Below, in pieces: positions 10,901-32,800 of a stretch of DNA of 64,000 bases (position 1 is its first letter; each line of letters begins with the position of its first letter). The stretch lies in the IMG/VR virus record IMGVR_UViG_3300046694_000296, positions 124,001 to 188,000 of that record, one strand, 5' to 3'. Under the pieces are notes generated by a model. It was not told the origin of the DNA, ran no database searches, and saw nothing but the letters and a program-made list of their open reading frames with translations. The position numbers and the translations under genes were made by a program.

Positions 10901-11635
10901 ATGGCAAAGCAACCTACTCGACGCGCCGAAGCGCGCAACACCAAGCGGCGCGGCGACGCACCCGTCAATGAGCTGGAGATGGAGCAGCGCGTGCCGTTTC
11001 GCGCGCCGCCGCCCCTGGCTCCGAAGACGGACAGCCAGCGCCGCTACATGAATGCCATCAAGCACTTCCAGCTCGTCTTCGGCACGGGGCCGGCCGGCAC
11101 GGGCAAGACCTATATCGCGGGCGCCATCGCCGCGCAGCGCCTTGCTGACAAGGAGATCGAGAAGATCGTCATCACGCGGCCCGCCGTCGATGCTGGCGAA
11201 TCCCTCGGCTTTTTGCCGGGTGAGCTCGAGGAAAAGTATGGCGTCTACATTCAGCCGTTCCGGGACGTGCTCGACGAGCGTCTGGGCAAGAGCTTCGTGG
11301 ACTACCTGCTGCGCACGGGCCGCATCGAGGCCGCACCGCTCGCGTTCATGCGCGGGCGCACGTTCAAGGACTGCGTGGTCGTCTTGGACGAGGCGCAGAA
11401 CACGACACCCACGCAGATGAAGCTCTTCCTCACGCGTATCGGCGAGGGCTGCACGGTGATCGTCAACGGCGACCTCAAGCAGAAGGACATTCCCGGCCCG
11501 AGCGGGCTCGAGGATGCACTCAAGCGCCTGTCGTTCATCCCGAACGTGAAGGTGGTGGAGTTCAGCCGCAAGGACGTCGTGCGATCCGGCCTGGTTCAGG
11601 AGATCGTCGAAGCCTACGAGCAGCAGGCCGCGTGA
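10901..11635 (+). CDS. phoH: PhoH family ATPase
   Basis: GPAGTGKT, GFLPG, RGRTF, LDEAQN, GDLKQ and VRSGLV motifs. Confidence 0.95.
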   Translation: MAKQPTRRAEARNTKRRGDAPVNELEMEQRVPFRAPPPLAPKTDSQRRYMNAIKHFQLVFGTGPAGTGKTYIAGAIAAQRLADKEIEKIVITRPAVDAGESLGFLPGELEEKYGVYIQPFRDVLDERLGKSFVDYLLRTGRIEAAPLAFMRGRTFKDCVVVLDEAQNTTPTQMKLFLTRIGEGCTVIVNGDLKQKDIPGPSGLEDALKRLSFIPNVKVVEFSRKDVVRSGLVQEIVEAYEQQAA

Positions 11636-11819
11636 TGGGAGGCGACGCCAGCTGAAGGAAGGGAGGCGGGTTTAACCCCGTCTCCCGCGCGTTTCTGAGG
11701 AACGAGGAATCACTTGGGGCTTGGAACGTGTTCCCTCTATATATAACCCTTCTTTAACTTCTTTCTATACTGTAACTAGAGACTTACTTTAAATATCAAT
11801 TAGTGAGGAACGCAGGACC

Positions 11820-12518
11820 GTGAACTTACCTCAATGCTTCGGCGACGCGCTCACCCCCGCTGACTGTGAAATGCTGGCCCTGACACGCGTCGATCCCTCG
11901 CTGCGGGCGGCCGAATCGCTGCTCTACAGCCGCAAGTGGTTCGATTTCAGGGCGCTCCACCCCGTGCAAGCCACGTATCGGTTCGCCCACGAATACGCGG
12001 AGAGCGTCAAGCGCGCATATGCCCGCCAGAAAGACATTCGCACGCTCGCGGGCGTGCAGGGTTTCGATGTCGAGAAGCTCTTCGAGAGCCGTGAACTCAG
12101 CGCGATGTGGCGGGCCCGACAGGCGTTCGACGCGATCGGCGTGCGCTATGACTTCGGCCTCGACTTCATCATGAAGCGATTCTGTGAACGCGGCTGGCGC
12201 GTCTTCCCGCGTCCGAACCAGCTGTATGCCGAAGAGGTGATCCTCGATGTGCGCGACGCGTGGCACCGGGAGTGCAAGGCCAAGACGCAACTCGCCCGGC
12301 ACGAGCGGTTCGATGCGCGCAACTACACCGGCCACCCCGACGAGAAAGCCTATCAGGCGTGGCAGGTCGATCAGGTCAAGGCCCGCGGCGGCAACCGCGC
12401 AATGCTGCTCGGACGGCTGCTGCAGGAGAACGTGCTCACCGAAGCGGTGGTGCACGCCGCCTTTGGCGAGGCAATGCTTGCCCAAGCGCGCAAATTCGTA
12501 GTTGCTGCCGATAAGTAA
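11820..12518 (+). CDS. Hypothetical protein upstream of the replication genes
   Basis: Long ORF with consistent codon usage and a preceding promoter-like region. Confidence 0.7.
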   Translation: MNLPQCFGDALTPADCEMLALTRVDPSLRAAESLLYSRKWFDFRALHPVQATYRFAHEYAESVKRAYARQKDIRTLAGVQGFDVEKLFESRELSAMWRARQAFDAIGVRYDFGLDFIMKRFCERGWRVFPRPNQLYAEEVILDVRDAWHRECKAKTQLARHERFDARNYTGHPDEKAYQAWQVDQVKARGGNRAMLLGRLLQENVLTEAVVHAAFGEAMLAQARKFVVAADK

Positions 12519-12532
12519 TTCGTTACTATACT
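12512..12532 (+). promoter_or_regulatory. Operator + -10 box (Hfq-like/dnaB operon)
   Basis: TAAGTAATTCGTTAC-TATACT. Confidence 0.75.
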
Positions 12533-12581
12533 GACTGACAGACGACCTAACGTCTCATTCAATTTCACCCCGGAGCATCAC

Positions 12582-13034
12582 ATGAGCCTCACCCCCGAAC
12601 AAGCCCGTGCAGAACAACTCGCCTATGGTCGCTCGACCCTGCGCGCCAATCCCGATTACCCGCGTCGTATCCAGCAGCCCGAGCGCGCAGGCTACAGCCA
12701 GCGCCCGGTTGCCCCGCGCAAGCCGAACACCGCAGGCCACGACGTCATTCTGAAGGCCATGCAAGAGGGCGGTCAGCGCGCGACGATCGTCACGCAGGGC
12801 GACGGCGTTGCGTTCGAAGGCGTCATCACGGGTCGCGACAAATACACGATCACGCTCAAGACGGCGCATCCCGACGCTGAGCGCGCAGCAGCCGGCGAAA
12901 CGGTTCGCCGCGTGTTCTACAAGTCGGCGATCGAGCAGTTCTGGGGCGAAGAAGTCCGTCGCAACATTCACGACACCGAGCGCGACGAAGAGGGCTTCCG
13001 CTCGCTGGCTGAAATGACCAAGGCGGTGAACTGA
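12582..13034 (+). CDS. Hfq/Sm-like RNA-binding protein
   Basis: HDVILKAMQEGGQRATIV..G..FEGVITGRDKYTITLK...VFYKSAIEQF aligns by eye to Hfq Sm1 and Sm2 (VYKHAISTV). Confidence 0.7.
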   Translation: MSLTPEQARAEQLAYGRSTLRANPDYPRRIQQPERAGYSQRPVAPRKPNTAGHDVILKAMQEGGQRATIVTQGDGVAFEGVITGRDKYTITLKTAHPDAERAAAGETVRRVFYKSAIEQFWGEEVRRNIHDTERDEEGFRSLAEMTKAVN

Positions 13035-14422
13035 TGACTGCAGCCGCACCGACACTTTCTGTGGTGCCGGCGGCGAGCACGGTCGAGGAACCGCCCAAGT
13101 TCAACTTTGACGCGGAGTTCCAGGCCCGCATCGCCGCGCTGACACTGCGCGATTCGACCTTCAACTCGATGGTGGATGGGCTCGTGAAGGCCGACTACTT
13201 CGAGTCGGAGATCGAAGCCTATCTGGTGGGAGCAGCGCTGCGCTACTTCCAGAAATACAAGAAGGCGCCCGCGGGTCTGCCGATTTACGCGATGCTGATC
13301 CGCGACGACATCGACTCGAAGGTGCTGCCGAAGAACCTGGCGACCGCCGCCATCGGTCGGCTCAAGGAGCTCTTCGCCGAAGACATCTCGGATCGCGAGT
13401 TCGTGGTCGATCAGGTTGCCACCTTTGCCCGTCACCAAGCGGTGCAAGAGGCGATGTTCAAGGCGATCCCGATGCTCGACAAGGGCAACTTCGATGCGAT
13501 CTCCACGCTCATGCGTGGCGCGCTCGACGTGGGCGCAACGAGCGGCGACGACGAATACGACTACGGTGCGGAGATCGACACCCGCACGGCCACGCGCTTG
13601 CAGCGCGCCGCCGGCAAGGCACCGCCCACGGGAATCACGACCGGCTACAAGGTGATCGACGAGCTCCTGTTTCACAAGGGCTGGGGTCGCAAGGAGCTGC
13701 AGGTCATTCTCGGCGGCCCGAAAGCGGGCAAGACGACAAGCCTGATCGACTTTGGTCTGAACGCATGGGCCGCAGGCTTCAACGTGCTCTACGCCTCGTG
13801 TGAAGTCGGCAAGGACGTCATCAGCGCCCGGATGGACGCGAACGTCTCGCAGACGCTCTTCAAGGAGCTCGACAGCCACACGCACGAAGTCCGGCAGAAG
13901 GTCGCCGAGCACGTGCAGAAGTGCTTGCGCTCGGACGGCACGCGCTCGGTGTTCAAGGTCCACGAATACCCGACGGGCGGGCTGAAGCCTTCGGAGCTGC
14001 GCCGGCTGCTGGAGCGCTACAAGACCAAAGGCGTCGTGTTCGATCTGGTGATCGTCGACTACGCGGACATCATGTGCCCGGAGCGTCACACCGACAGCGC
14101 CATTGAAAACAGCAAGTCGATCTACGTGGATCTGCGCGGGATCGCCATTCGCGAGAACTGCGCGGTGCTGACGGCCACGCAAGCGAACCGGCTGGGCTCA
14201 AACGCAAACGTCATCAAGGCCGAACACGTCGCAGAAGACTTTAACAAGGTCCGTATTGCTGACCTGATGATCTCGATTAACCGCACCGACGAAGAGCGTG
14301 CAGCGGGCCGTGCCCGGTTGTTCTTTGCGGCATCGCGAAATCAGGAAGGCGAGTTCACACTCGAAATCGAGCAGGCGCTCGACCGCATGAAATTCATCAC
14401 CCGAGTCCTCGGGTTCGTTTAA
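13034..14422 (+). CDS. dnaB: Replicative DNA helicase (DnaB-like)
   Basis: Walker A GGPKAGKT, IVDYAD and ATQANR motifs. Confidence 0.9.
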   Translation: MTAAAPTLSVVPAASTVEEPPKFNFDAEFQARIAALTLRDSTFNSMVDGLVKADYFESEIEAYLVGAALRYFQKYKKAPAGLPIYAMLIRDDIDSKVLPKNLATAAIGRLKELFAEDISDREFVVDQVATFARHQAVQEAMFKAIPMLDKGNFDAISTLMRGALDVGATSGDDEYDYGAEIDTRTATRLQRAAGKAPPTGITTGYKVIDELLFHKGWGRKELQVILGGPKAGKTTSLIDFGLNAWAAGFNVLYASCEVGKDVISARMDANVSQTLFKELDSHTHEVRQKVAEHVQKCLRSDGTRSVFKVHEYPTGGLKPSELRRLLERYKTKGVVFDLVIVDYADIMCPERHTDSAIENSKSIYVDLRGIAIRENCAVLTATQANRLGSNANVIKAEHVAEDFNKVRIADLMISINRTDEERAAGRARLFFAASRNQEGEFTLEIEQALDRMKFITRVLGFV

Positions 14423-14432
14423 GGAGCTGGTT

Positions 14433-14774
14433 GTGAAAGAACGTCCGCTGGTCCTCATCTATTCAAACTGGAACGAGTGTCAGAAATTCCGGCGCGAGCA
14501 CGGGCTCGGCCTTCGTCCGGCCGAAATGAAGGCCGAGAACATGAGGCTCGGGCTCATGGGCCACCGTGACTTCGACTTCATGTTGGTCGACACGGCTCTC
14601 GCGCCGGAGTTGGAAGCGGAGCTCGAGCGCCGCGGGTGCACGCATGTGGTGCCGGTCACGCGCTGGCGCTACCGCATCGCCGACGCCATTGCGAACGCCG
14701 TCGAATGGGTTTTCGATCGAATGATGGCCTTCCTAGATGTGCCGCGCACCAAGCGCGTGCGGGTGATGAAGTGA
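14433..14774 (+). CDS. Hypothetical protein
   Basis: AAGGAG RBS and GTG start; GTGA overlap with the primase. Confidence 0.6.
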   Translation: MKERPLVLIYSNWNECQKFRREHGLGLRPAEMKAENMRLGLMGHRDFDFMLVDTALAPELEAELERRGCTHVVPVTRWRYRIADAIANAVEWVFDRMMAFLDVPRTKRVRVMK

Positions 14775-15868
14775 ACGACGACCTCGGCGAGCTCCTCGAG
14801 CGCGTAGACATGGCTGCATACCTCGACCGCGAGGGCGTCTCCTATCGGGAGACGCACGGACGGTCGGGGGCACAGCTCAACATTCGGGAGTGCCCGCTGT
14901 GCGGCAATAGCGACTGGAAGGTCTACGTCAATGCCGAGTCGGGCGTCGGGAACTGCTTTGCAGGCTCGCACCCCGCAGAGGAGCGGTTCTTCACCAAATA
15001 CAAGTTCATCCGCGCACACCTCGGCTCGCCGGTCGGCGGCAAGGTGGTCGATCACATTCGTGTGTTCGCGCGTGAAATGGGCTGGCGGCCCGCGCGTCGC
15101 GTCTCAGCCAAGGTCGAGAACGCACCGGGCGCATGGGAGCTTCCCGCGCACGTCACGCTGCCGCACAACGGGCAGAACATGCCGTATCTGGAGAATCGCG
15201 GGATCGACGCGGAGCTCGCCGCATATTTTCACCTCGGCTACTGTCCGAACGGGGCGAGCTTCCGATTCTTGTCTGAGCGCGGCTGGGCCACGCAGGACTG
15301 GTCGCGTCGCATCCTGATCCCGGTCTACGACCTCGATGGCAAGATCGCGACCTTCCAAGGGCGCGACGTCACGGGTCGGGCCGAAAAGAAATACCTGTTC
15401 CCGCCGGGCATCGACGGCTCGGGCGTGCACCTCTTCAATGGGCTCAACGTCCGTGACACGAAGCGTATCGTGGTGGGTGAGGGCGCATTCGACGTGGCTG
15501 CGACCAAGATCGCGCTCGATGGCGACGCCGAGCTGCGCGACGTGGTGCCGGTGGGCACGTTCGGCAAACATCTGTCCTCGGGCAGCGAGAACAGCCAGCT
15601 CGCGAAGTTCCAGACGCTCAAGGAGCGCGGTGTCGAAGAGGTGACCTTCCTCTGGGACGGCGAAGTCCAGGCGACCGACGACGCGATCAAGGCGGGCCTG
15701 ATGCTCAAGTCAGTCGGCTTTCGCGTGCGCGTCGCGATGTTGCCGCCGGGCAAGGATCCAAACGAAGTGTCTGCTGACGTGGTGCGCGCCGCCTTCTATC
15801 AGGCGAAGCTGCTCGACCGGAAGTCGGCGCTGGAGATCATGACGCTTCGTCGCAAGCTGAACGGATAA
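14771..15868 (+). CDS. DNA primase (Zn-binding + TOPRIM)
   Basis: CPLC Zn finger, YLENRGI, FQGR, GEGAFD, WDGE and KDPNE motifs. Confidence 0.9.
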   Translation: MNDDLGELLERVDMAAYLDREGVSYRETHGRSGAQLNIRECPLCGNSDWKVYVNAESGVGNCFAGSHPAEERFFTKYKFIRAHLGSPVGGKVVDHIRVFAREMGWRPARRVSAKVENAPGAWELPAHVTLPHNGQNMPYLENRGIDAELAAYFHLGYCPNGASFRFLSERGWATQDWSRRILIPVYDLDGKIATFQGRDVTGRAEKKYLFPPGIDGSGVHLFNGLNVRDTKRIVVGEGAFDVAATKIALDGDAELRDVVPVGTFGKHLSSGSENSQLAKFQTLKERGVEEVTFLWDGEVQATDDAIKAGLMLKSVGFRVRVAMLPPGKDPNEVSADVVRAAFYQAKLLDRKSALEIMTLRRKLNG

Positions 15869-17363: not shown

Positions 17364-18773
17364 ATGACTTCCGCCGTAATGACCAGCTGCCAGGCGTTCA
17401 ACGTGATCGAGAAAATCGCCGCGACCTCCAGCAAGAACGACAAGCAGGCGATGGTGAAGCAGTTCCTCGCCTTCGACACCTTCAAGCGCGTGCTCGTCGC
17501 CGCACTCGACCCACTCGTGACCTACGGCATGCAGCAAGTGCCCGATCGCCTACCCAACACAGCACCGGGCGCCAACACCTTCGAGAACGCTGGAATCTGG
17601 GAGACGCTCGACCAGCTGCGGCTGCGCAATCTCACCGGCAACGCCGCGCGCGACGAAGTGCAGCGCTTGATGACCTTCCTCACGCCCGAGTCGGCCGAGC
17701 TCTTCAAGCGGATCTTGCGCAAGGATCTGCGCGCGGGCTTCTCCGAATCGACCGTCAACAAGGCATGGAAGGGGCTCATCCGCGAGTTCCCCTACATGCG
17801 CTGCGCGCTCCTGAAGGACGCGAAGCTCGACACGTGGACGTGGGAAGCGGGCGTGATCTCGCAGGAGAAGGCCGACGGCATGTTCATGAACATCGACCAC
17901 GAGGAGGGCGGGGTGGTGCGCATGACGAGCCGACAGGGCACGCCGTTTGATGTCGAGACGTTCGGCGTCTTCGCCGACCATGTGCGTGCGATGTTCCCTG
18001 CCGGCACGCAGACGCACGGCGAAATGCTCGTGGTGGTCAACGGCGAAATCGCCCCGCGCGAAATCAGCAACGGTATCCTGAACCGCGTGGCGGCGGGCGG
18101 CCAGTTCTCGCATGCCGAGACACCGCGGTTCTTCGCGTGGGATCAAATCCCGCTGGCCGTGGTCGCGCCGAAGGGCAAATACGAAGTCGGGTATCGCGAG
18201 CGTCTGAAGGCGATGGTCAAAGGCATGACGAACGGCCCGCGTGCACTCGGCATCCAGAGCGCGATGATTCAGGTCATTCCGACGAAGGTGGTCAAGTCGC
18301 TGGAAGAGGCGATGACTCACTATCGCGATCTGCTGGCCCAAGGCAAGGAAGGCACGATCATCAAGAACGGGGCCGCGACGTGGAAGGACGGCACGAGCAA
18401 GGAGCAGATCAAGCTCAAGCTCGAGGTGGACGTCGATTTGAAGGTGATCGCCATTGCGCCGGGCCGTGTGGGCACGAAGAACGAAGGCCGCGCTGGCGCT
18501 TTCACCTGCGAGACGTCCGAGGGCGGGCTGCGCGTCGATGTGACGGTGAAGAACGAGGCGCTACGCGATGAGGTCGATGCCAACCCCGAGAAGTTCATCG
18601 GTGGGATCATTGCAGTGCGCGCGAACGCGGTGATGAAGCCGAGCGAGAGCAACGACCGGCATAGCCTGTTTTTGCCGCGCATGGTCGAAGCAGGGCTTCG
18701 CCTCGACAAGAGCGAGCCGGATACGCTCACGCAAGTCATCGCGCAGTTCGACGCGGCAGTGAAGGGGGCATAA
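17364..18773 (+). CDS. lig: ATP-dependent DNA ligase
   Basis: EKADG adenylation motif, HGEM, EGTIIK, KLK and SLFLPR motifs. Confidence 0.92.
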   Translation: MTSAVMTSCQAFNVIEKIAATSSKNDKQAMVKQFLAFDTFKRVLVAALDPLVTYGMQQVPDRLPNTAPGANTFENAGIWETLDQLRLRNLTGNAARDEVQRLMTFLTPESAELFKRILRKDLRAGFSESTVNKAWKGLIREFPYMRCALLKDAKLDTWTWEAGVISQEKADGMFMNIDHEEGGVVRMTSRQGTPFDVETFGVFADHVRAMFPAGTQTHGEMLVVVNGEIAPREISNGILNRVAAGGQFSHAETPRFFAWDQIPLAVVAPKGKYEVGYRERLKAMVKGMTNGPRALGIQSAMIQVIPTKVVKSLEEAMTHYRDLLAQGKEGTIIKNGAATWKDGTSKEQIKLKLEVDVDLKVIAIAPGRVGTKNEGRAGAFTCETSEGGLRVDVTVKNEALRDEVDANPEKFIGGIIAVRANAVMKPSESNDRHSLFLPRMVEAGLRLDKSEPDTLTQVIAQFDAAVKGA

Positions 18774-24862: not shown

Positions 24863-27202
24863 ATGAAAGTTAACAACCGCGTCCTGGTCATGCGTGAGGC
24901 AATCACGAAGATCGTGCCGATGTTAACTCAACGCTCGGTGAAGGTAACGCAGCAAGGCACGCAAGCGTTCGTCGAGTATCACGGGACGACGCTGGAAGTT
25001 AAGCGCGTGAACCTGCCGTATATCCCCGAAGACGCCAGCGACCAGCTGCTCGACGCGACGCAGGGCTTCCTCGACCACGAGGTCGGCCACGTTCTGTTCA
25101 CGGAGCAGAAGTTCGTCAAGAAGGCCGCGAAGCTCCAGGTGCACTCGCTGCACAACATGATCGAGGACACCTTCGTCGAGCGGAAGATGGGCGAGAAATT
25201 CCCCGGTTGCGGATCGAACCTGACCCGCATGCACGGTTTCTTCCTGACCGAGTGGATCGACACGCAGCTCAAGGAGAAGCCCGAGCATGCCGCCGCGATT
25301 CTGATGGTCTGCGCGATTCGTGCATGGGCGGGCCAGCCCGCCTTCGTCGGCTACATGAAAGACAAGTGGTCGATGATGGAAGACGTCGTGAACCGGCTCG
25401 GTGCCGACTTCCCGAAGATGATCCGGGGCGTCAACAGCAGCGAAGCGGGCCTGAAGGTCGCGATCGAAGCGAAGAAGCGTCTCACGCCGAAGCCGCAACC
25501 GAAAGCACCGACGCCGCCGACGCCTCCGCAGCCGGCACCGCCCGAGCCGCCGAAAGCTGAAGAGCCGCAGCCGTCCGACGACGAGAACGCGAAGAACGGC
25601 GCGGAGCAAAGCAGCGGCGAGTCGCACGATGACGCCGACGACAAAGAGCCGCAGCAACCGAACGATATGCCCAACCTCACCGACGAGGAGCCCGAGCAGA
25701 GCGCATCCAGCGCCCCGCAGCCGGAGGGTGACGACGAGGACGAGGACGAGCTCGACGACGCTGAAGGTGAGGAAGATCGGGAGCCGGAAGGTGAGCCCGA
25801 ACAGGAGCAGCCCGCACCTGCGCCGGGCGACGAAGAGGACGACGACGCAGAGGATACCGAGAGCCCGCTGGACGTCAACGAGCCGGACGACGACCTCGAC
25901 GACGAGGACGAGGACACCAGCACCGAGCAGGACGACGAGGGTGACAACGCGGGCGGTGGCATGTCGGGCGAAGAGGCCGACAACGACCATGACGTCGGCG
26001 ACGAAGAGGGCGCACCGAGCGGTGGCGGCGACGGTCTGCCCGGTGGCGAAGAGTCGGGCGACACCGCCGAGAGCGATGCGGGCGACGCGGGCGGCCAGGA
26101 CGAGAACGGAGCGGGCCAGCAAGACGCGGGCGACGAAGAGGGGCACGGCACGCCCGAAGCAGGCGAGGGCGATCAGCCGATCGAGCGCGATCCGAACGAC
26201 GATCGCGACTTCTTCAAGGAGTTCGAAGACGCTGACGTGAAGGAGTTCGACGAGGCGGCCGCCGAAGCACTCTCGAAACAAGCGGTCGAGGCTGCGCGCG
26301 GTGCGGACTACATCGTGTTCACCCGCGACGAGGACGTCCTCGAAGTGCTGGACGTGCCCGATGCGTTCGGGCAGGAGGAAGTCACCCGAATGCAGAGCAA
26401 GGTGGACCACATGATCGGGCCGCTGCAGAAAGATTTGCAGCGCGCTATCGCGGCGCGTTCTGCAGCAATCTGGACGGGCGGGCACCGGCGCGGCCAGCTG
26501 CACGGCGCATCACTCGCCCGCGTGCTCACCGGCCGCGACGACGTGTTCAGGCAGAAGCAGGTGTCCCGCACGAAGGACGTCGCGGTGTCGCTCCTCGTCG
26601 ATGCGTCCGGCTCGATGTGGGAGCACGACAAGATTCGCGTCGCCACTTATGCCGCGTATGCGCTCTCGGCGGTGCTCGACAACATCGGCATCACCAACGA
26701 GGTGCTCGCCTTCAGCACGAAGGAGCTGAGCTTCCCGGCAATGTCGGCGATGCACAAAGAGGCAAGCGAGCACGGCCTCAAATACTCGCGGGGCGCCGCG
26801 CTCGATATGCGCATCCTGAAGTCCTACGCCGAGCGCATGACGCCGCTCGTGCGCCGACGCTTCGCGTTGCTCGCGGGTGCTAACGCAATGCTGCAAGAGA
26901 ACGTCGATGGCGAGAGCGTGCAGATCGCGAATCACCGTCTCCAGCAGCAGCGCGCGACGCGCAAGGTGATGATGGTGCTCTCGGATGGGATGCCTGCGTG
27001 CGATGGGCGTCGCAGCCCGGTCCTCGCGTCGCACCTGAAAGAGGTAGTGCGACAGATCGAAAAGCGCGGCACCGACGTCGTAGCGCTCGGCATTCTCGAC
27101 CCTTCGGTGAAACAGTTCTACGACCGCGCGCTGGTCCTCAATTCGGTGGCAGAGCTGCCCGGCGTCGTGATGAAGGAGCTGCACCGACTCCTCGTGCAGT
27201 GA
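24863..27202 (+). CDS. CobT-like VWA-domain protein with a long acidic linker
   Basis: N-terminal DHEVGH metallopeptidase-like motif; C-terminal MIDAS DASGSM...SDGMP; adjacent to a CobS-like ATPase. Confidence 0.85.
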   Translation: MKVNNRVLVMREAITKIVPMLTQRSVKVTQQGTQAFVEYHGTTLEVKRVNLPYIPEDASDQLLDATQGFLDHEVGHVLFTEQKFVKKAAKLQVHSLHNMIEDTFVERKMGEKFPGCGSNLTRMHGFFLTEWIDTQLKEKPEHAAAILMVCAIRAWAGQPAFVGYMKDKWSMMEDVVNRLGADFPKMIRGVNSSEAGLKVAIEAKKRLTPKPQPKAPTPPTPPQPAPPEPPKAEEPQPSDDENAKNGAEQSSGESHDDADDKEPQQPNDMPNLTDEEPEQSASSAPQPEGDDEDEDELDDAEGEEDREPEGEPEQEQPAPAPGDEEDDDAEDTESPLDVNEPDDDLDDEDEDTSTEQDDEGDNAGGGMSGEEADNDHDVGDEEGAPSGGGDGLPGGEESGDTAESDAGDAGGQDENGAGQQDAGDEEGHGTPEAGEGDQPIERDPNDDRDFFKEFEDADVKEFDEAAAEALSKQAVEAARGADYIVFTRDEDVLEVLDVPDAFGQEEVTRMQSKVDHMIGPLQKDLQRAIAARSAAIWTGGHRRGQLHGASLARVLTGRDDVFRQKQVSRTKDVAVSLLVDASGSMWEHDKIRVATYAAYALSAVLDNIGITNEVLAFSTKELSFPAMSAMHKEASEHGLKYSRGAALDMRILKSYAERMTPLVRRRFALLAGANAMLQENVDGESVQIANHRLQQQRATRKVMMVLSDGMPACDGRRSPVLASHLKEVVRQIEKRGTDVVALGILDPSVKQFYDRALVLNSVAELPGVVMKELHRLLVQ

Positions 27203-27339: not shown

Positions 27340-28551
27340 ATGAGCGATACCGGCGACAAGATCACTTGCCAGGAGTGCGGCGCGCTAACCCACGCGATTC
27401 AGCTCCACCTGCCGGATGCCCACCCGGGCATGACTCTCGCCGACTATCAGGCGAAATACCCCGAAGCACCGATCCTCTCCAAGCGCGCTCAAGCTGAACT
27501 CGAACGCCAGCGCGCAGCAAAAGCTGCCGCAGCTGCACCCGTGACCGCCGCGATGGCGGGCGGTGCTGTGCCCGCTAATGTGATCGCGCTGAACCCCGAA
27601 GGCAAGACGACCGCCACGCTGCACGACACGTTCGGCTTGCTCGACGGTCACGGTAAGCCGGTGCCCGCAGCGCTCAATTCGCGCAAGGGTCCGATCGAAA
27701 TCACCGTGTTCGCCTCGCCGCGTGACGCCGATATGGTGCCGGCGATCGACCCCGGCTTCATCTTCGATATCGAAAACCTGCGCAACGCGATCATGGCGCT
27801 CGAACTCCGCAAGAACCTCTACGTGTGGGGTCACGCCGGAACGGGCAAGACGACGCTCATCGAACAGATCATGGCGCGCACCGGGCGGCCGGTGATTCGC
27901 GTGCAGCACTCGATCGGCACCGAAGAGTCGCACGTCCTCGGTCAGTGGGTGGTGCGCGGCGGTCAGACCGAGTTTCAACCGGGCCTGCTCCCGCTCGCGA
28001 TGCGCAACGGCTGGACCTACCTCGCCGACGAATACGACTTCGGTAACCCCGCGGTCCTCGCCGTGTATCAACCGATCCTCGAACCGGGCAAGAGCCTCGT
28101 CATCAAGGACGCACCCGACGAGTGGCGTGTGGTGAAACCGCACGAGAACTTCCGCTTCGTCGCAACGGGCAACACGAACGGTTCCGGTGACGACACGGGC
28201 CTCTATCAAGGCACGCAGATTCAGAACGCCGCGAACTATGACCGTTTCGGCATGGTGCTCGAGGCGACCTACATGCAGCCGGAGCTCGAGTCGGCGATTC
28301 TGGTGCAGCGCAGCCGGATTCAGAAGAAGAACGCCGATCAGCTGGTGGACTTCGCGAACCGCGTGCGCGAAGCCTATAAGAACAAGGAGATCGCGAGCAC
28401 CATCTCGCCGCGATGCCTGATCGACGCGGCCGACATCGGTCTGCGACGCGCGAACTGGCGCTTGGGCGTGACGCTCTCCTTCATCAACAAGCTCTCTGCG
28501 GTGGACCGCGCTGTCGTTGACGGCGTTGCATCGCGAATTCTCGACAAGTAA
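27340..28551 (+). CDS. CobS-like MoxR AAA+ ATPase with an N-terminal C2H2-like finger
   Basis: GHAGTGKT, LADEYD, ATGNTNG and DRF motifs; N-terminal CQEC...H...H. Confidence 0.88.
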   Translation: MSDTGDKITCQECGALTHAIQLHLPDAHPGMTLADYQAKYPEAPILSKRAQAELERQRAAKAAAAAPVTAAMAGGAVPANVIALNPEGKTTATLHDTFGLLDGHGKPVPAALNSRKGPIEITVFASPRDADMVPAIDPGFIFDIENLRNAIMALELRKNLYVWGHAGTGKTTLIEQIMARTGRPVIRVQHSIGTEESHVLGQWVVRGGQTEFQPGLLPLAMRNGWTYLADEYDFGNPAVLAVYQPILEPGKSLVIKDAPDEWRVVKPHENFRFVATGNTNGSGDDTGLYQGTQIQNAANYDRFGMVLEATYMQPELESAILVQRSRIQKKNADQLVDFANRVREAYKNKEIASTISPRCLIDAADIGLRRANWRLGVTLSFINKLSAVDRAVVDGVASRILDK

Positions 28552-28576
28552 CCTAGTAAGTAACGGATTACCAATC

Positions 28577-29215
28577 ATGCTGCAATCGGCCCAATCGACT
28601 ATCAATACCCGCACCTCGACCCGCTACGAGGACCACACCGGCATGCTGCACAAACTCGCAAAGCGCGGCTGGGGCCGATTGCAGGAGGCAGGGCTCGACG
28701 TGACCTACGAGGACGTCTACCAGCATATGTGCGAGAGCTTCGTGAAGTGCCAGTCCACCTACAAGGTCGACACCGGCTTCTCGTTCTCGGCGTATTACGG
28801 TCGCTCGATCTGGAACAACTTCAACCACTGGGCCGAGCGCCAGATCGAGGAGAAGCATACGCTTGGCCTCGTCTCGGTCGAGAGCCTGTGCGGCAGCGAC
28901 GACGAAGGCGAAACCGACGTGTTCGAATTCATCGAGCAAGAGGACGACGAAGAGACGCCTGAAGACCGGCTCGCCGCGCGTCAGGAGTCGCACCGGCTTG
29001 CCCGCATGCTCTCGGACGATGCCAAGCGCATGGTCGCGCTGCTCGCGCACCAGACCCCGGCGCTCGAACAGTGGATGGACGAGCGCAACGCGCGCATGTT
29101 GAAAAAGACCTACCAAATCAACCTGTGGCTCATTGGCGAGTTCCTGGGTTTCGAGCGCAAGAAGGTGAGTCGCCTGCGCCTGGAGCTGGAGCGCGTCTAC
29201 GGCGTGGAGCTGTGA
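28577..29215 (+). CDS. Sigma-70-like phage transcription factor
   Basis: EDVYQ...Y..DTGFSFSAYY...IWN resembles sigma region 2; C-terminal HTH-like segment. Confidence 0.55.
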   Translation: MLQSAQSTINTRTSTRYEDHTGMLHKLAKRGWGRLQEAGLDVTYEDVYQHMCESFVKCQSTYKVDTGFSFSAYYGRSIWNNFNHWAERQIEEKHTLGLVSVESLCGSDDEGETDVFEFIEQEDDEETPEDRLAARQESHRLARMLSDDAKRMVALLAHQTPALEQWMDERNARMLKKTYQINLWLIGEFLGFERKKVSRLRLELERVYGVEL

Positions 29216-29829
29216 TGAGCCACCCGAGCTGCTTCGGGCTGCCGTCGGTGTTCACCGCGAGCACGCAGACCTGCACGGCGTGCGCCTCGCGCAGCGAATG
29301 CGTGAGCGCCTGCTATTCGATGCTCGTCTCGCTCTCGGACAAGATCGACGTGACGGCCCCGCTCGCGCAGCTAGAGCGCACGGCCCGCGTCGTGACCGCG
29401 CAGTCGATACCCGCGCACGCGGTCGCAACGACGATCGCGGCGCCCGCGCCCGCCGCAGTGCAGGTGAACCTGGCGCACGGTGAGCGCGAGCATGACCTTC
29501 TTACGAGCCTGCCTGTGCGGGTGCAAAAGGTGATGCGCCCGCTTCTCAAGCGCGGCGGGGATGCCCGCGCACGCCTTGCGCTCGCGAAAGGGCAGAACCC
29601 CTTCGACGGGCGCGGCCCGCAGTGGTTGCGCCTTGCCGGTGAAAAGCTCCTCGCCGGCAGCTTCACCAAGGGCGAGCTGCGGCACGCCTACATCAACGAA
29701 TACGGCTGGTCGGAGTCGACCGCCTTCTCGCGCGTGTCCATCGTCGTGTCGGTGATTCCGGCGTTGCGTCTGGGCCGCGTCAGGGGCGACACGGTGCTTC
29801 GTGCGCCGACGCTCGCCCGGGATCATTGA
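29215..29829 (+). CDS. Hypothetical protein with a Cys cluster
   Basis: PSCFG...CTAC...ECVSAC; TGATG coupling. Confidence 0.7.
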   Translation: MSHPSCFGLPSVFTASTQTCTACASRSECVSACYSMLVSLSDKIDVTAPLAQLERTARVVTAQSIPAHAVATTIAAPAPAAVQVNLAHGEREHDLLTSLPVRVQKVMRPLLKRGGDARARLALAKGQNPFDGRGPQWLRLAGEKLLAGSFTKGELRHAYINEYGWSESTAFSRVSIVVSVIPALRLGRVRGDTVLRAPTLARDH

Positions 29830-29860
29830 AGCATCAACCCATTCACCGCAGGAGCTCAAG

Positions 29861-32800
29861 TTGAATATCAAGCACCTCCTGTCCGCGCGCAGCGATTTCT
29901 CGCTCGGGGAGTCCACCTTGCAGGTCGGCACCCTGATCGACACCGCGAAGGCGCAGGGCTATGAGACGGTCGCCCTCGTGGACAACATGACCATCTCCAA
30001 CATGGTCGCGTTCACCGACAAGGCGAAGAAAGCGGGGATCAAGCCGATCGTGGGCTGCACGATTCGCATGGTCGACGATCCGACCTACCGCAAGCCGCCG
30101 AAGGCGTCGGGTGAGGTCGAGCGTCCGAACCCGCTCGTCATGCTCAAGGTCTACGCCAAGACCGACGCGGGCCTGCGCAGCCTCATGAAGCTGCTCTCCA
30201 AGGGAAACAGCCCGGAATACTTCTACTACCACTCGCGCGTGGGCCTCGAGGACGTGCTGCAGCTGGAGGAGTGCGCGGTGAGCACGGGCGACTTCTATGG
30301 CCTGTTCCATCACAAGCGCTGGGAGGAGATCGCATACCGGCTAAGCGAAAAGTTCGGCCGCGACTTCTGCGTCGAATTCGTGCCCGGCGGCACGCCGCTG
30401 CACAAGACGCTCAACAAGCTCGCGCTCCTTTGCCACGACCGCTTCATTTCGACGCCGATCGGCACCTGGCCCGCGCTCTATGCGACCGACGATCAAGCCG
30501 ACAGCCTCGACGTGCTGCGCGCGATTCTCGGCAACAACAAGATGACCGACAGGTGGCTCAACAAGCCCTACCTGCGCAACTTCTCGATCCGCGCGCCGGG
30601 CGATCTGGTGCGCGCGCTCGTCGCGGAAGGCTTGCCCGCGAAGGAGATCATCAACGGCAACCAGGCGCTTGTCGATTCGTGCACGTTCGAATTCAAGAAG
30701 CTCGAGCCGTGTCTGCCGAAGATGGCCGACGACGAGTTTCTGGCGCTGGTCGAGCAGGTCAAGAAAGGCTGGGCGCAGCGCTTCGCCGCGCCCGTGCTCG
30801 GGCATCAGCCCGCGCCCGAAGAGCTGCCGCAATACAAAGCGCGCCTCGCTTACGAACTGGACGTGCTGCGCAAGATGGGCTTCTCGGGCTACTTCCTGCT
30901 GGTGCAGCACATCGTGCAGTGGAGCAAGCAAAACGGCATTCTGGTCGGCCCCGGCCGCGGTTCGGTAGGTGGGAGCCTCGTCGCCTATCTGATGGGAATC
31001 ACTGACGTCGATCCGATCCGCTTCAACCTGCTGTTCGAGCGTTTCATCAATCCTGAGCGTCTTGACTTGCCCGACGCCGACCTCGACTTTATGTCCAAGC
31101 GCCGGCATGAGGTGATCGACTACATCGCCGAGCACTTCGGGCGCGAGAACGTCGCGGGCGTGTCCAACTACAACACGATGGGCGCCGCGGGCGTGATGCG
31201 CGATACCTCGCGCGTGCACGAACTCAACCCGTTCGACTACGCCTGCTCGAAGCAGATGGAAAAGCAGCACGGGGTTTCCCTCTCGCTGGAAGAGTCCGCT
31301 GCGATCGTGCCGGAGATCGACAAGTTCAAGGGCCAGTTTGCCGGCATCTGGAAGCATATGGTCAACCTCGAAGGCGCGGCGCGCGGGCTCGGGCAGCACG
31401 CCGCCGGTGTGATCGTCGCGGGTGAGCCGATCATCAACCGCGCCGTGGTCGAGACACGCACCGGCGGGCCGGTGTGCAATTGGGACAAGCGCACGGTCGA
31501 GGACTTCGGGCTCATCAAGATGGACATCTTGGGCCTGACCAACCTCGACGTGATGAAGCTCGCGGCCGACTACATCAAGGAGCGACACGGCAAGTCGATC
31601 GACTTCCTGCGTCTGCCGCTCGATGACAAGAAGGTGATGGAGGCATTCGGGCGGGGCGACACCACGGGCGTGTTCCAGTTCGAGTCGCCCGGCATGCGTC
31701 GGTTGCTGCGCGAGATGGCGCTCGCGGGTCCGGTGACCTTCGACGACCTCGTGGCGGTGGTCGCGCTCTATCGTCCGGGTCCGCTCGACGCGGGTCTGTG
31801 CGACGACTACGTGGCGATCAAGCAAGGGTCCAAGCAACCCTACTACGAGCACCCGAACATGGCGCCCGCGCTGAAGGACACCTACGGGGTGATCGTGTAT
31901 CAGGAGCAGGTGATGCAGATCGCGCGGGACTTGGCGGGCTTCACGATGGCCGGCGCCGACCACCTGCGTAAAGCGATGGGCAAGAAGGACAAGGAGAAGA
32001 TGGCCGAGATGCGCCAGAAGTGGGTCGATGGCTGTATGACGCACTCAGGCATGTCCGAAGGCACGGCGCACGCGCTCTTTGACAAGATCGAAGTGTTCGC
32101 CGGCTACGCCTTCAACAAGTCGCACTCGGTGGAATATGCGGTGATTTCATTCTGGACGATGTGGCTCAAGTGCTACTACCCGGCCGAATACTTCGCCGCC
32201 TCGCTCACCGAAATCGACAAAGAAGAGAAGCGCGAACCGCTCGTGCAGGACGCGCGGCGCATGGGCATGCAGGTCTTGCCACCCGACATCAACCATTCGA
32301 GCGCACGGGTAGAGATCGTGGGCGAGGACAAGCTCTACGCCCCGTTCCAGGCGCTCAAGGGTCTGTCCGAGAAGGCTGCGGGCTACATCGTCGATGCGCG
32401 CAACAAGTGGGGCAAGCCCTTTGCCAACCGCACCGACCTCGACGCGGCACTGAAGGCGGCGGAATACTCGGGCCGGCACATCAACCAGAGCGTGAAGGAC
32501 AAGCTGGTGCTCATTGGTGCCTTCGCCGAGTGCGAGGGCGACAAGGTGCCCGCCATGCACCCCGATCGGCTGAAAAACCGCATCGAGCTTCTGCCAGGTT
32601 TCACGGTCGATACTGTGAAAGCTGATCGAACGCTCAACGCTGAGCACCTTGCCTTGCTGCAACTGGTGCGCATCGGTGAGGAGACGCGCTCATGCGAGAA
32701 GTGTTCGCTCAAGGGCGGCTGTCACCCGATGCCGCGCATCGGTAAGACGCCGAAGTTCATGGTGGTGTCCGACAACCCGAACTGGCAGGAGGAGAAGGCG

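What the first reader, a model, noticed from the sequence alone, without database searches (positions are those of the whole stretch)
12582..13034. Phage-encoded Hfq/Sm-like protein translationally coupled to dnaB
Seen: residues align by eye to Hfq: helix (HDVILKAMQ), Sm1 (ATIV..G..FEGVITGRDKYTITLK) and Sm2 (VFYKSAI versus VYKHAI), with an Arg-rich N-terminal extension and a longer loop. It sits under an operator-controlled promoter and overlaps the dnaB start (TGATG). Hfq homologs on phages are uncommon. Inference: it could form mixed rings that rewire host sRNA regulation, or act in phage replication. The His-to-Ser change suggests an altered proximal RNA pocket.
Basis: partly seen in the sequence, partly recalled or inferred. 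Interest (0 to 1): 0.62.

Follow-up and report, generated by a model that had tools for sequence, protein, structure and literature searches.

The report
Phage Hfq-like protein coupled to helicase
This phage gene really does encode a diverged relative of the bacterial RNA-binding ring protein Hfq; it is always the gene just before the phage's DNA helicase gene, so it probably serves phage DNA replication rather than copying the host Hfq's usual job.

Summary
ORF 12582-13034 (+, 150 aa) is a real gene under purifying selection (dN/dS 0.13). Its TGA stop shares one base with the ATG of a DnaB-like helicase.

Residues 51-122 form an Hfq-type Sm fold. The AlphaFold core has pLDDT about 90, and all top 50 PDB Foldseek matches are Hfq (TM 0.67-0.88). 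The family profile aligns to E. coli Hfq at E = 1e-4. A syntenic homolog passes Pfam's Hfq threshold; this protein does not (17.1 against 27 bits).

It is not a canonical Hfq:
- The rim arginine patch RRER reads QEGG.
- Distal Tyr25 is Val.
- Loop L4 carries a conserved insertion of about 12 residues.
- The tail is an N-terminal, Arg-rich, disordered extension.

In every locus that carries a homolog, the gene sits between a conserved 232-aa unknown protein and DnaB, with an overlapping stop and start. This holds down to 29% identity and includes cultured Pseudomonas Nickievirus phages. One of these, Nican01, is already annotated hfq.

I favour a ring-forming binder of single-stranded nucleic acid that acts in phage replication. 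Oligomerisation, nucleic-acid binding and contact with DnaB remain untested.

In passing: the 215-kb "genome" is two diverged units of about 108 kb, joined at one 156-bp repeat.

The parts
11820..12518 (+). Conserved 232-aa protein of unknown function (phrog_2500), always immediately upstream of the Hfq-like gene or, where that is absent, of DnaB
   Evidence: phrog_2500 E = 7.3e-45. Homologs sit in the same position in all related loci, including SSU5, nickie and Rhizobium phages. The model is all-helical (mean pLDDT 70) with no significant fold match.
12511..12532 (+). Phage-specific promoter-like motif ATAAGTAATTCGTTACTATACT. It has a -10-like TATACT and a degenerate copy of the palindrome GTnAC-N2-GTTAC, and it overlaps the stop codon of the upstream gene
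   Evidence: Repeated 19 times in the contig, 18 of them on the + strand upstream of ORFs. In the window a 14-nt version gives 9 matches against 0.69 expected. It is conserved upstream of the Hfq-like gene in L005, L006, L009, L011, L013-L016. The palindrome is enriched, 31 against 2.3 expected. No sigma-70 consensus promoter was found.
12540..12555 (+). 5'-leader hairpin AGACG-acctaa-CGTCT followed by an A/U-rich stretch (CATTCAATTT)
   Evidence: Found by the terminator-like scan. It is identical in the paralogous unit, and L013 shows a possible compensatory change (GACGG/CCGTC). Its function is unknown.
12572..12575 (+). Shine-Dalgarno GGAG, 6 nt before the ATG
   Evidence: Read directly from the sequence. 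CGGAG is conserved in related loci.
12582..13034 (+). Hfq-like (Sm-fold) protein gene, 150 aa including stop
12591..12644 (+). Conserved N-terminal helix (residues 4-21, TPEQARxxQLAYGRxTL), specific to the long (127-162 aa) subfamily. An Arg-rich disordered linker follows (residues 22-50)
   Evidence: Nearly invariant P5, E6, R9, Q12 and R17. Predicted helix 5-21 with pLDDT 70-75, and linker pLDDT about 50. The helix is absent from the nickie (89 aa) and L018 (94 aa) homologs.
12732..12947 (+). Sm/Hfq core, residues 51-122: alpha1 (51-63) and beta1-beta5 (66-71, 77-85, 89-95, 107-113, 117-122)
   Evidence: AlphaFold2 blocks at pLDDT 82-92. Top 50 Foldseek PDB matches are all Hfq, TM (target-normalised) 0.67-0.88. 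hhalign to E. coli Hfq covers residues 53-120.
12864..12899 (+). Loop L4 insertion (residues 95-106, AHPDAERAAAGE) with a near-invariant His-Pro, between beta3 and beta4
   Evidence: Gap opposite E. coli Hfq. H96 and P97 are conserved in at least 90% of the family. A short helix at 99-103 is predicted. L4 lies on the distal face of Sm rings (PMC3710371).
13032..13036 (+). TGATG stop/start overlap between the Hfq-like gene and dnaB
   Evidence: A T(G/A)ATG, ATGA or 8-nt overlap is conserved in all 17 loci compared and in L026.
13034..14422 (+). DnaB-like replicative helicase, 462 aa
   Evidence: phrog_19 E = 2.8e-74, Pfam DnaB_C E = 8.7e-13. Closest cultured relatives are Pseudomonas phage nickie and Rhizobium phages at 43-44% identity.
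14636..15868 (+). DnaG-type primase gene. The true start is probably near 14774, because the listed GTG start overlaps ORF 14433-14774
   Evidence: Homologous to the annotated primases of nickie, V1VFA-S and SSU5. Alignments begin near residue 47.

Best explanation
ORF 12582-13034 encodes a genuine but strongly diverged member of the Hfq branch of the Sm superfamily. It is carried as the first gene of the helicase-primase operon of a phage of about 105 kb, in the nickie/SSU5-like supergroup (rhizosphere, probably a Burkholderiales host).

Shown:
- It has the Hfq fold and the Hfq-type motifs.
- It is under purifying selection.
- It has its own conserved promoter-like element and Shine-Dalgarno sequence.
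- Its stop overlaps the dnaB start in every homolog-bearing genome examined.

Inferred:
- Like other Sm proteins, it assembles into a ring. It binds single-stranded nucleic acid through the partly retained proximal pocket (His53 for Gln8, Lys87 for Gln41, Tyr88 for Phe42, Lys114 for Lys56, Ser115 for His57) and through its Arg-rich disordered N-terminal tail.
- It is made together with DnaB and works in phage DNA replication. Possible jobs are holding ssDNA or primer/origin RNA for the helicase-primase, or helping helicase loading.
- It is not a canonical sRNA-mRNA matchmaker. The rim arginine patch (RRER to QEGG) and distal Tyr25 (to Val) are missing, and the distal face carries a conserved L4 insertion.

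My probabilities: Hfq-family Sm fold about 0.95; ring-forming nucleic-acid binder about 0.8; primary role in replication about 0.45.
For: **Fold and family**
- Pfam Hfq hit E = 0.0044 over residues 54-95.
- 15 of 22 family members hit Pfam Hfq, best E = 4.8e-7.
- The syntenic homolog P0026 scores 28.3 bits against the cut-off of 27.
- The family profile against E. coli Hfq gives E = 1e-4 over 55 columns.
- AlphaFold2 core pLDDT is 82-92 with alpha-beta5 topology.
- All top 50 PDB Foldseek matches are Hfq.
- The nearest Atlas clusters carry Hfq_1/Hfq.
- NCBI and JGI name relatives Hfq, and GenBank annotates the Nican01 homolog as hfq.

**Real gene**
- dN/dS is 0.13 against the paralog, and the amino-acid changes concentrate in the linker.

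**Link to replication**
- The order 232-aa protein, Hfq-like, DnaB, primase, ligase is conserved in L005-L018, L026, nickie and four more Nickievirus isolates.
- The stop/start overlap is kept even at 29% protein identity.
- The promoter-like motif is conserved directly upstream.
- No PF00436 SSB is detectable in the contig.
- Precedent: Hfq-like genes lie in the helicase operon of Thermococcus plasmids (PMC3543421).

**Not a canonical matchmaker**
- Rim, distal and L4 differences, read against PMC3753642 and PMC3710371.
Against: - This protein itself is below Pfam's gathering score (17.1 against 27 bits).
- The PDB sequence-profile search gives Hfq only at E = 0.48.
- SSU5 and the Rhizobium phages have the same helicase module without the gene. 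DnaB therefore does not strictly need it.
- All carriers belong to one phage supergroup, so the conserved synteny may partly be inheritance rather than repeated selection.
- The co-fold of DnaB with the protein gave no answer (score 0.00). This counts neither for nor against binding.
- No experiment or RNA data exist: no RNA run holds the stretch.
- Ring formation and nucleic-acid binding were not tested here.
Confidence: 0.5

Rival explanations
1. Host take-over factor. The phage Hfq-like ring competes with or mimics host Hfq. It might sequester host sRNAs or mRNAs, or form mixed rings, and so reprogramme host post-transcriptional regulation during infection.
For: - It has the Hfq fold with a partly retained proximal pocket: K114, Y88 and the YK(S/H)AI motif.
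- Some family members keep His at the H57 position.
- Hfq-dependent RNA regulation matters in phage-host interplay (papers listed).
Against: - The rim RRER patch, essential for annealing in E. coli Hfq (PMC3753642), is QEGG here.
- Distal Tyr25 is lost and the L4 face is remodelled.
- Core identity to E. coli Hfq is only about 24%, which makes mixed rings doubtful. This was not tested.
- The gene is never found among early or host-takeover genes. It is always locked into the replication operon.
Confidence: 0.2
2. Post-transcriptional regulator of the phage's own replication operon. The ring binds the leader of its own mRNA (5' hairpin plus A/U-rich stretch) or other phage transcripts. In this way it sets the translation of dnaB and primase, as E. 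coli Hfq autoregulates hfq.
For: - A leader hairpin at 12540-12555 is followed by CAUUCAAUUU. It is identical in both units despite about 81% overall nucleotide identity, and L013 shows a possible compensatory change.
- Translational coupling means that control of the first cistron would pass on to dnaB.
- Autoregulation of hfq is known in E. coli (PMC6348989, listed).
Against: - The hairpin is absent from more distant carriers (L005, L014-L016, nickie), although the gene and its coupling persist.
- Nothing reached any Rfam family's gathering score in the window.
- There is no direct evidence of binding.
Confidence: 0.2
3. Chance ORF or a small beta-barrel unrelated to Sm, with the Hfq resemblance being coincidental.
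For: The single-sequence Pfam hit is subthreshold, and the PDB sequence-profile search is weak (E = 0.48).
Against: - 21 homologs with 21 invariant columns.
- dN/dS of 0.13.
- All top 50 fold matches are Hfq.
- A syntenic homolog passes Pfam's Hfq cut-off.
Confidence: 0.02

Closest known systems
Bacterial Hfq (Pfam PF17209; E. coli K-12 Hfq, PDB e.g. 3rer, 1kq2, 6gwk)
   Same: - N-terminal helix plus five-strand bent sheet.
- Conserved Gly in beta2 (G80) and Asp in L3 (D86).
- The Hfq-type motif [YF]K[HS]AI at the beta4-beta5 turn.
- Lys at the K56 position and an aromatic residue at the F42 position.
   Different: - Rim RRER reads QEGG.
- Tyr25 is Val, Gln8 is an invariant His, Phe39 is an invariant Arg, and His57 is Ser.
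- L4 carries an insertion of about 12 residues with a conserved His-Pro.
- The disordered tail is N-terminal and basic, not C-terminal and acidic.
- The gene is encoded in a phage replication operon, not in miaA-hfq-hflX.
- The Pfam score of this protein is below the gathering threshold.
Hfq-like proteins of cultured Nickievirus phages (Pseudomonas phage nickie gp117, 89 aa; the Nican01 'hfq' gene)
   Same: - Homologous: family profile against gp117 gives E = 2e-7, probability 94%.
- Same position between the phrog_2500 protein and DnaB, with an overlapping stop and start.
- An extended L4 loop is also present.
   Different: - The nickie protein lacks the conserved N-terminal helix, the Arg-rich linker and the C-terminal helix.
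- It is only 29% identical.
- It keeps two basic residues in the rim segment.
- I found no functional study of any of these proteins.
Zn-finger-Hfq-like proteins of Thermococcus/Methanococcales plasmids (pTN2/pEXT9a-like; Krupovic et al. 2013, PMC3543421)
   Same: An Sm/Hfq-like gene on a mobile element lies in the same transcription unit as the replicative helicase gene. The authors also proposed a role in replication.
   Different: - It is archaeal.
- The gene lies downstream, not upstream, of a different helicase type.
- It is fused to a C2H2 zinc finger.
- No sequence relationship to this protein was tested here.
Phage helicase-loader/accessory genes that precede the helicase gene (SPP1 G39P before G40P; lambda P). 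From my own knowledge, not tested here
   Same: A small gene directly upstream of, and co-expressed with, a DnaB-type helicase. An initiator-like gene precedes it.
   Different: - No fold or sequence similarity: G39P and lambda P are helical proteins, not Sm folds.
- No interaction with DnaB is shown here (one search gave no answer).
- The upstream 232-aa helical protein is at least as good a loader candidate. Its only lambda P fold match is insignificant (rank 6, E = 2.4).

Membership tests
Hfq (Pfam PF17209), bacterial branch of the Sm superfamily | Significant match to the family profile (gathering score 27 bits) | tested here: inconclusive
   - This protein scores 17.1 bits, E = 0.0044, below the cut-off.
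- 15 of 22 family members match at E <= 0.01, best 4.8e-7.
- The syntenic homolog P0026 scores 28.3 bits (passes) and P0021 scores 26.3 bits.
- The family profile against E. coli Hfq gives E = 1e-4, probability 58%.
Hfq (Pfam PF17209), bacterial branch of the Sm superfamily | Sm fold: N-terminal alpha-helix followed by five strongly bent antiparallel beta-strands | tested here: met
   - AlphaFold2 gives H51-63, then E66-71, E77-85, E89-95, E107-113 and E117-122, at pLDDT 82-92.
- All top 50 Foldseek PDB matches are Hfq chains, probability 1.0, target TM 0.67-0.88.
- This rests on a predicted structure, not a solved one.
Hfq (Pfam PF17209), bacterial branch of the Sm superfamily | Hfq-type Sm2 motif YKHAI and proximal-face uridine pocket (Q8, Q41, F42, K56, H57; residue roles from my knowledge of Hfq-RNA structures) | tested here: inconclusive
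   - The motif reads YKSAI here. It is FKHAI or YKHAI in P0008, P0020, P0021 and P0026.
- Aligned residues are H53, K87, Y88, K114 and S115.
- K56 and the aromatic residue are kept, and three of the five positions are substituted.
Hfq (Pfam PF17209), bacterial branch of the Sm superfamily | Basic rim patch (R16, R17, R19) that catalyses RNA annealing (PMC3753642). This defines the matchmaker activity of proteobacterial Hfq, not the fold | tested here: not met
   The aligned residues are Q61, E62 and G64 (family consensus Q-E/D-N-x). Q61 is invariant.
Hfq (Pfam PF17209), bacterial branch of the Sm superfamily | Distal-face A-rich (ARN) binding site built on Y25 and a short L4 loop | tested here: not met
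   Y25 aligns with V70 (V/I in the family). L4 carries a conserved insertion of about 12 residues. L4 defines the distal face (PMC3710371).
Hfq (Pfam PF17209), bacterial branch of the Sm superfamily | Homo-hexameric ring | not tested
No oligomer model was made.
Hfq (Pfam PF17209), bacterial branch of the Sm superfamily | Binds single-stranded RNA (and DNA) | not testable with these tools
   This needs EMSA or fluorescence anisotropy with purified protein.
Replicative-helicase loader/accessory protein | Physical interaction with the DnaB-type helicase | tested here: inconclusive
   The co-fold of DnaB (alignment A2) with the protein (A1) scored ipSAE 0.00 in two runs. The tool's verdict was 'no answer', which is not evidence either way.
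Replicative-helicase loader/accessory protein | Gene co-transcribed and co-translated with the helicase gene across relatives | tested here: met
   The stop/start overlap is conserved in 17 loci plus L026. The promoter-like motif is conserved upstream of the pair. The gene is absent from SSU5 and Rhizobium relatives.

The most novel reading that the evidence does not exclude
An Sm/Hfq ring has been recruited as a dedicated replisome accessory in a widespread supergroup of phages and phage-plasmid-like elements of about 105 kb. It is made in step with the hexameric DnaB helicase by translational coupling. It would bind ssDNA or primer/origin RNA with its proximal pocket and basic N-terminal tail, and would use its remodelled L4 (distal) face or conserved N-terminal helix to dock on the helicase-primase. 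This would be a bacterial-virus counterpart of the helicase-linked Hfq-like genes of archaeal plasmids, and a new kind of helicase cofactor or SSB substitute.
Probability: 0.3. Interest if true: 0.7.

Novelty: new variant of a known kind. Interest (0 to 1): 0.45.

Why it matters
Hfq is studied almost only as a cellular RNA matchmaker. This family keeps the Hfq fold but has lost the annealing rim and the A-rich-binding face. It is locked into a phage helicase-primase operon over long evolutionary distances.

If the ring works at the replication fork or origin, that would extend Sm-protein biology to DNA replication of bacterial viruses. It would also give a handle on how this large group of phages, which includes biocontrol phages of Pseudomonas syringae and elements in Burkholderia, loads or supports its helicase. 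It would further suggest that 'Hfq' annotations in phage genomes should not be read as sRNA hijacking.

If it turns out to be an RNA regulator after all, it remains an ordinary, already-annotated accessory gene.

Tried and rejected
- **Phage-collection searches with the region or the protein.** Megablast of 11800-14500 and tblastn of the protein both found no match. The family is too diverged from cultured phages for BLAST. The link to Nickievirus came from the structure search and from synteny.
- **PDB sequence-profile search.** Hfq is the top hit but only at E = 0.48. It is not usable alone.
- **Complex prediction, DnaB (A2) with the Hfq-like protein (A1).** Score 0.00 in two runs, and the controls were not run. 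The verdict was 'no answer', so I use it neither for nor against binding.
- **Function of the upstream 232-aa protein.** The AlphaFold2 model is all-helical. Foldseek finds nothing at E <= 0.001. A lambda P loader chain appears only at rank 6 with E = 2.4 and TM 0.26. VIA-align's best Z is 5.5, within noise for helical proteins. The function remains unknown.
- **Stenotrophomonas phage ANB28.** A 69-aa ORF occupies the same position and overlaps dnaB. Homology to the family is not supported (hhalign probability 0.07; no Pfam hit). I do not count it as a member.
- **Genome-contig scan for relatives in species-representative genomes.** None was confirmed. The host inference therefore rests only on NCBI names of relatives (Burkholderia) and on GC content.
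- **Sequencing runs.** Only rhizosphere or soil DNA metagenomes hold the stretch, and no RNA run does. Expression could not be checked, and read laying was not used.
- **T7-like single-subunit RNA polymerase as reader of the ACTATA-containing promoter motif.** The PF00940 search found no match in the contig, but the control genomes did not ring either, so that search is uninformative.
- **Rfam and tRNA scans of the window.** Nothing found.
- **One failed look-up.** The look-up of encoding contigs for P0028 did not complete and I did not repeat it.
- **Not used.** The large representative-protein search was not used, because family scans and the word search had already placed the protein.
Full report
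**1. The observation**

The window holds an ORF at 12582..13034 on the + strand, encoding 150 aa. A GGAG lies 6 nt upstream of the ATG. The stop TGA (13032-13034) shares its last base with the ATG of the next ORF, 13034..14422. That ORF is a DnaB-like replicative helicase (phrog_19 E = 2.8e-74; Pfam DnaB_C E = 8.7e-13).

The gene is not a chance ORF:
- The word-based protein search returned 21 relatives at 47-91% identity.
- Their alignment has 21 invariant columns, concentrated in GHDxILKAMQ, GxITGRDKYTITL and RRVFYKSAIEQFWGE.
- Against the paralogous copy in the same contig, dN/dS is 0.13, and most amino-acid changes fall in the linker at residues 30-52.

**2. Is it Hfq-like?**

Taken alone, the protein gives only a subthreshold Pfam Hfq hit: E = 0.0044, 17.1 bits against a cut-off of 27, over residues 54-95. 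The wider evidence is consistent, however.

- 15 of the 22 family members hit Pfam Hfq, and only Hfq, with a best E of 4.8e-7.
- A more distant syntenic homolog (L018, protein P0026, 94 aa) passes the curated threshold: 28.3 bits over profile positions 4-62 of 64. The Burkholderia cepacia member reaches 26.3 bits.
MAFFT gives the same register.
- An AlphaFold2 model built on the family alignment has a confident core. Ten-residue blocks from 51 to 120 are at pLDDT 82-92. The topology is helix 51-63 followed by five strands.
- With Foldseek against the PDB, all top 50 matches are Hfq chains from nine bacteria (including S. aureus, Caulobacter, Listeria, E. coli and Pseudomonas) or engineered E. 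coli Hfq constructs. Probability is 1.0 and target-normalised TM is 0.67-0.88.
- The ESM Atlas feature search puts the protein next to clusters carrying Hfq_1 and Hfq.
- Public records already name relatives 'RNA chaperone Hfq' or 'sRNA-binding regulator protein Hfq'.

I therefore take the Sm/Hfq fold as established at the level a predicted structure allows.

**3. How it differs from canonical Hfq**

I read the E. coli numbering through the alignments.

| E. coli Hfq | This protein | Note |
|---|---|---|
| Gln8 | His53 | invariant in the family |
| Arg16-Arg17-Glu18-Arg19 (rim) | Gln61-Glu62-Gly63-Gly64 | Gln61 invariant |
| Tyr25 (distal) | Val70 | Val or Ile in the family |
| Phe39 | Arg85 | invariant |
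| Asp40 | Asp86 | kept |
| Gln41 | Lys87 | invariant |
| Phe42 | Tyr88 | aromatic kept |
| Tyr55-Lys56 | Tyr113-Lys114 | kept |
| His57 | Ser115 | His in 3 of 22 members and in P0026 |

- **Rim.** Panja et al. showed that the three rim arginines are required for RNA annealing and strand exchange. The triple mutant is inactive although it still binds RNA (PMC3753642). This family lacks that patch.
- **Loop L4.** It is a few residues long in bacterial Hfq and defines the distal, A-rich-binding face (PMC3710371). Here it carries about 12 extra residues (95-106) with a near-invariant His-Pro and a predicted short helix.
- **Tails.** E. coli Hfq has a C-terminal disordered tail with an acidic tip. 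Here the long members have a conserved N-terminal helix (residues 4-21, TPEQARxxQLAYGRxTL). An Arg-rich disordered linker follows: 8 Arg and 1 Lys in the first 50 residues, at pLDDT about 50. They also have a mixed-charge C-terminal helix at 133-149.

The rim and the distal face are the larger departures.

**4. Context**

The neighbourhood is a lysis and replication block:
- an ORF with a lysozyme-like position, not scanned in the window (a Phage_lysozyme gene sits at the same place in L005)
- PhoH (10901-11635)
- a 232-aa protein of phrog_2500 (11820-12518)
- the Hfq-like gene
- DnaB
- a small ORF
- a DnaG-type primase
- an ORF at 17364-18773 that matches in position and size the DNA ligase called in relatives
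- further on, CobT/CobS-like genes and a large DNA polymerase

The nearest cultured helicases are those of Pseudomonas phage nickie, Rhizobium phages, Stenotrophomonas phages and the phage-plasmid SSU5, at 38-44% identity.

The BFVD structure search gave an uncharacterised 89-aa nickie protein as its second hit. That protein is gp117, the gene directly upstream of nickie's DnaB. It overlaps DnaB by 8 nt, in the same order PhoH, phrog_2500, small gene, DnaB, primase, ligase. It is homologous to the window's protein: BLASTP E = 6e-5 at 29% identity, and profile E = 2e-7 at probability 94%.

Four further Nickievirus isolates carry the same gene in the same place. In Nican01 it is annotated 'hfq: RNA-binding protein Hfq'.

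| Loci compared | Hfq-like gene between phrog_2500 and DnaB? | Stop/start junction |
|---|---|---|
| Window plus the 12 close loci L005-L017 (two assembly look-ups, ten of the twelve IMG/VR loci) | yes | T(G/A)ATG |
| L018 and L026 | yes | ATGA |
| Pseudomonas phage nickie | yes | 8-nt overlap |
| Stenotrophomonas phage ANB28 | small ORF present, homology not shown | 8-nt overlap |
| SSU5, Rhizobium phage V1VFA-S | no; the phrog_2500 homolog and DnaB are kept | not applicable |

The gene is therefore an accessory but very stable member of this replication cassette.

**5. Promoter**

No sigma-70 consensus promoter is found. The 22 nt at 12511-12532 (ATAAGTAATTCGTTACTATACT) belong to a repeated, strand-biased motif. 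ACTATACT occurs 18 times on + and once on - in the contig, usually 30-60 nt upstream of an SD and start codon. In the window a 14-nt version gives 9 matches against 0.69 expected.

The motif is conserved upstream of the Hfq-like gene in relatives. It is associated with a palindrome GTnAC-N2-GTnAC that occurs 31 times against 2.3 expected. The palindrome sits at fixed offsets either just upstream of, or just downstream of, the -10-like element. At this promoter one half-site is degenerate.

A 5'-leader hairpin (12540-12555) followed by an A/U-rich run is identical in both copies in the contig.

**6. Mechanism**

*Shown.* The protein has the Hfq fold, a conserved sequence under purifying selection, its own promoter-like element and SD, and obligatory co-translation geometry with DnaB.

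*Inferred.*
- Like other Sm proteins it forms a ring. This was not tested.
- It binds single-stranded nucleic acid through the partly kept proximal pocket and the basic tail.
- Because the annealing rim and the A-rich face are gone, it is unlikely to act as an E. coli-type sRNA-mRNA matchmaker.
- Its fixed place ahead of dnaB suggests a replication role. This is supported by the absence of a recognisable OB-fold SSB in the contig. It is also supported by the precedent of Hfq-like genes in the helicase operon of archaeal plasmids, where a replication role was also proposed (PMC3543421). Possible jobs are holding ssDNA or primer/origin RNA, or assisting helicase loading.

I give this reading about 0.45.

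*Rivals.* These are a host-Hfq competitor (0.2) and a post-transcriptional regulator of the phage's own replication operon acting through the conserved leader (0.2).

The one complex prediction available (DnaB with the protein) gave no answer, with a score of 0.00. I do not use it either way.

**7. Comparison and novelty**

- The protein works like, and folds like, an Hfq.
- On membership, it meets the fold criterion and partly meets the motif criterion.
- It fails the rim and distal-face features that define matchmaker Hfq.
- It is below Pfam's threshold itself, although syntenic relatives pass.
- Phage or mobile-element Sm-like proteins are known: a cyanophage Sm-like pentamer is cited in PMC3710371, mycobacteriophage 'Hfq-like domain' proteins appear in BFVD, and Thermococcus plasmids carry Hfq-like genes.
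- Relatives of this very family are already labelled Hfq in databases.
- I found no paper that studies them or notes the coupling to DnaB. The library is limited to open-access papers.

I rate it a new variant of a known kind, of moderate interest.

**8. Noticed on the way**

The record is an IMG/VR virus contig of 215,656 bp, classed as having direct terminal repeats and as 100% complete. It consists of two collinear units, 1-108,902 and 108,903-215,529. They are about 81% identical over 83 kb of alignment.

The only exact repeat of 127 bp or more is 1-156 = 108,903-109,058. The last 127 bp of the contig equal the first 127 bp. The contig therefore begins, joins and ends at the single long repeat shared by the two units. 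This is the signature of a figure-of-eight path through an assembly graph with k = 127. A true cointegrate formed by recombination at that repeat is the alternative.

Each unit type is also found on its own. A 105,058-bp IMG/VR contig carries the window's copy at 100% identity. Another sample carries the other unit's copy, whose translated protein is identical. Related genomes are 104-107.5 kb. The 'jumbo' size is therefore most probably an artefact.

Each unit has two ParB_N genes and no tyrosine integrase. This fits an SSU5-like extrachromosomal or virulent lifestyle, but I did not pursue it.

All holders of the stretch are rhizosphere or soil DNA metagenomes. Named relatives come from Burkholderia. 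With 62% G+C, that suggests a Burkholderiales host.

Only genetic code 11 was used.

Noticed in passing
whole contig G000:C1 (window = 124001-188000); junction at contig 108,903-109,058, outside the window: The 215,656-bp 'complete, DTR' virus record is two collinear, diverged units of about 107-109 kb (about 81% nucleotide identity). They are joined at the only exact repeat of 127 bp or more (156 bp), which also forms the contig ends. This is most likely a figure-of-eight assembly chimera of two related phages (k = 127), or else a real cointegrate. It is not a jumbo phage. Each unit type occurs separately in other samples; a 105,058-bp contig carries the window's copy of the gene at 100% identity.
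   Followed up: partly
window 12525, 15879, 33211, 34462, 39671, 48224, 49729, 52550, 55242, 57627 (+ strand): A repeated promoter-like motif (TAAGTnAC-N2-3-GTTACTATACT, -10-like TATACT) is almost always on the + strand upstream of an SD and start codon. It is paired with an over-represented palindrome GTnAC-N2-GTnAC (31 against 2.3 expected) at fixed offsets upstream or downstream of the -10. It looks like a phage-specific promoter and operator system with no canonical -35.
   Followed up: partly
window 11820-12518 (+): A 232-aa all-helical protein (phrog_2500) is conserved directly upstream of DnaB across the whole nickie/SSU5/Rhizobium-phage supergroup, with or without the Hfq-like gene. 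It has no Pfam family and no significant fold match. It is a candidate replication initiator or helicase loader.
   Followed up: partly
window 14433-14774 and 14636-15868 (+): The longest primase ORF starts at a GTG that overlaps a 113-aa ORF. Relatives align only from about residue 47 and have a gene of 57-58 aa after dnaB. Gene starts here are therefore uncertain.
   Followed up: no
window 24863-27202, 27340-28551, 28517-29215, 29801-33205 (+): CobT-like and CobS/porphyrin-ATPase-like genes, a weak sigma-factor-like ORF (phrog_351 E = 4.5e-5) and a 1134-aa DNA polymerase (phrog_405). These genes resemble those found in SSU5/nickie-like phages (my recollection; not compared here). The sigma-like protein could read the unusual promoters.
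   Followed up: no
contig 99,353-100,735 and 205,740-207,368 (outside the window; loci L022-L025): Each unit has two ParB_N-domain genes and no tyrosine integrase. This is compatible with a plasmid-like prophage state as in SSU5, but it is not shown.
   Followed up: no
L004:3781-3990 (Stenotrophomonas phage ANB28): A 69-aa ORF sits at the same position and overlaps dnaB by 8 nt. It has a pattern that looks Sm-like by eye, but no detectable homology to the family (hhalign probability 0.07, no Pfam hit).
   Followed up: partly
window 1-64000: No tRNA or tmRNA genes (ARAGORN), and no Rfam family at gathering score.
   Followed up: yes
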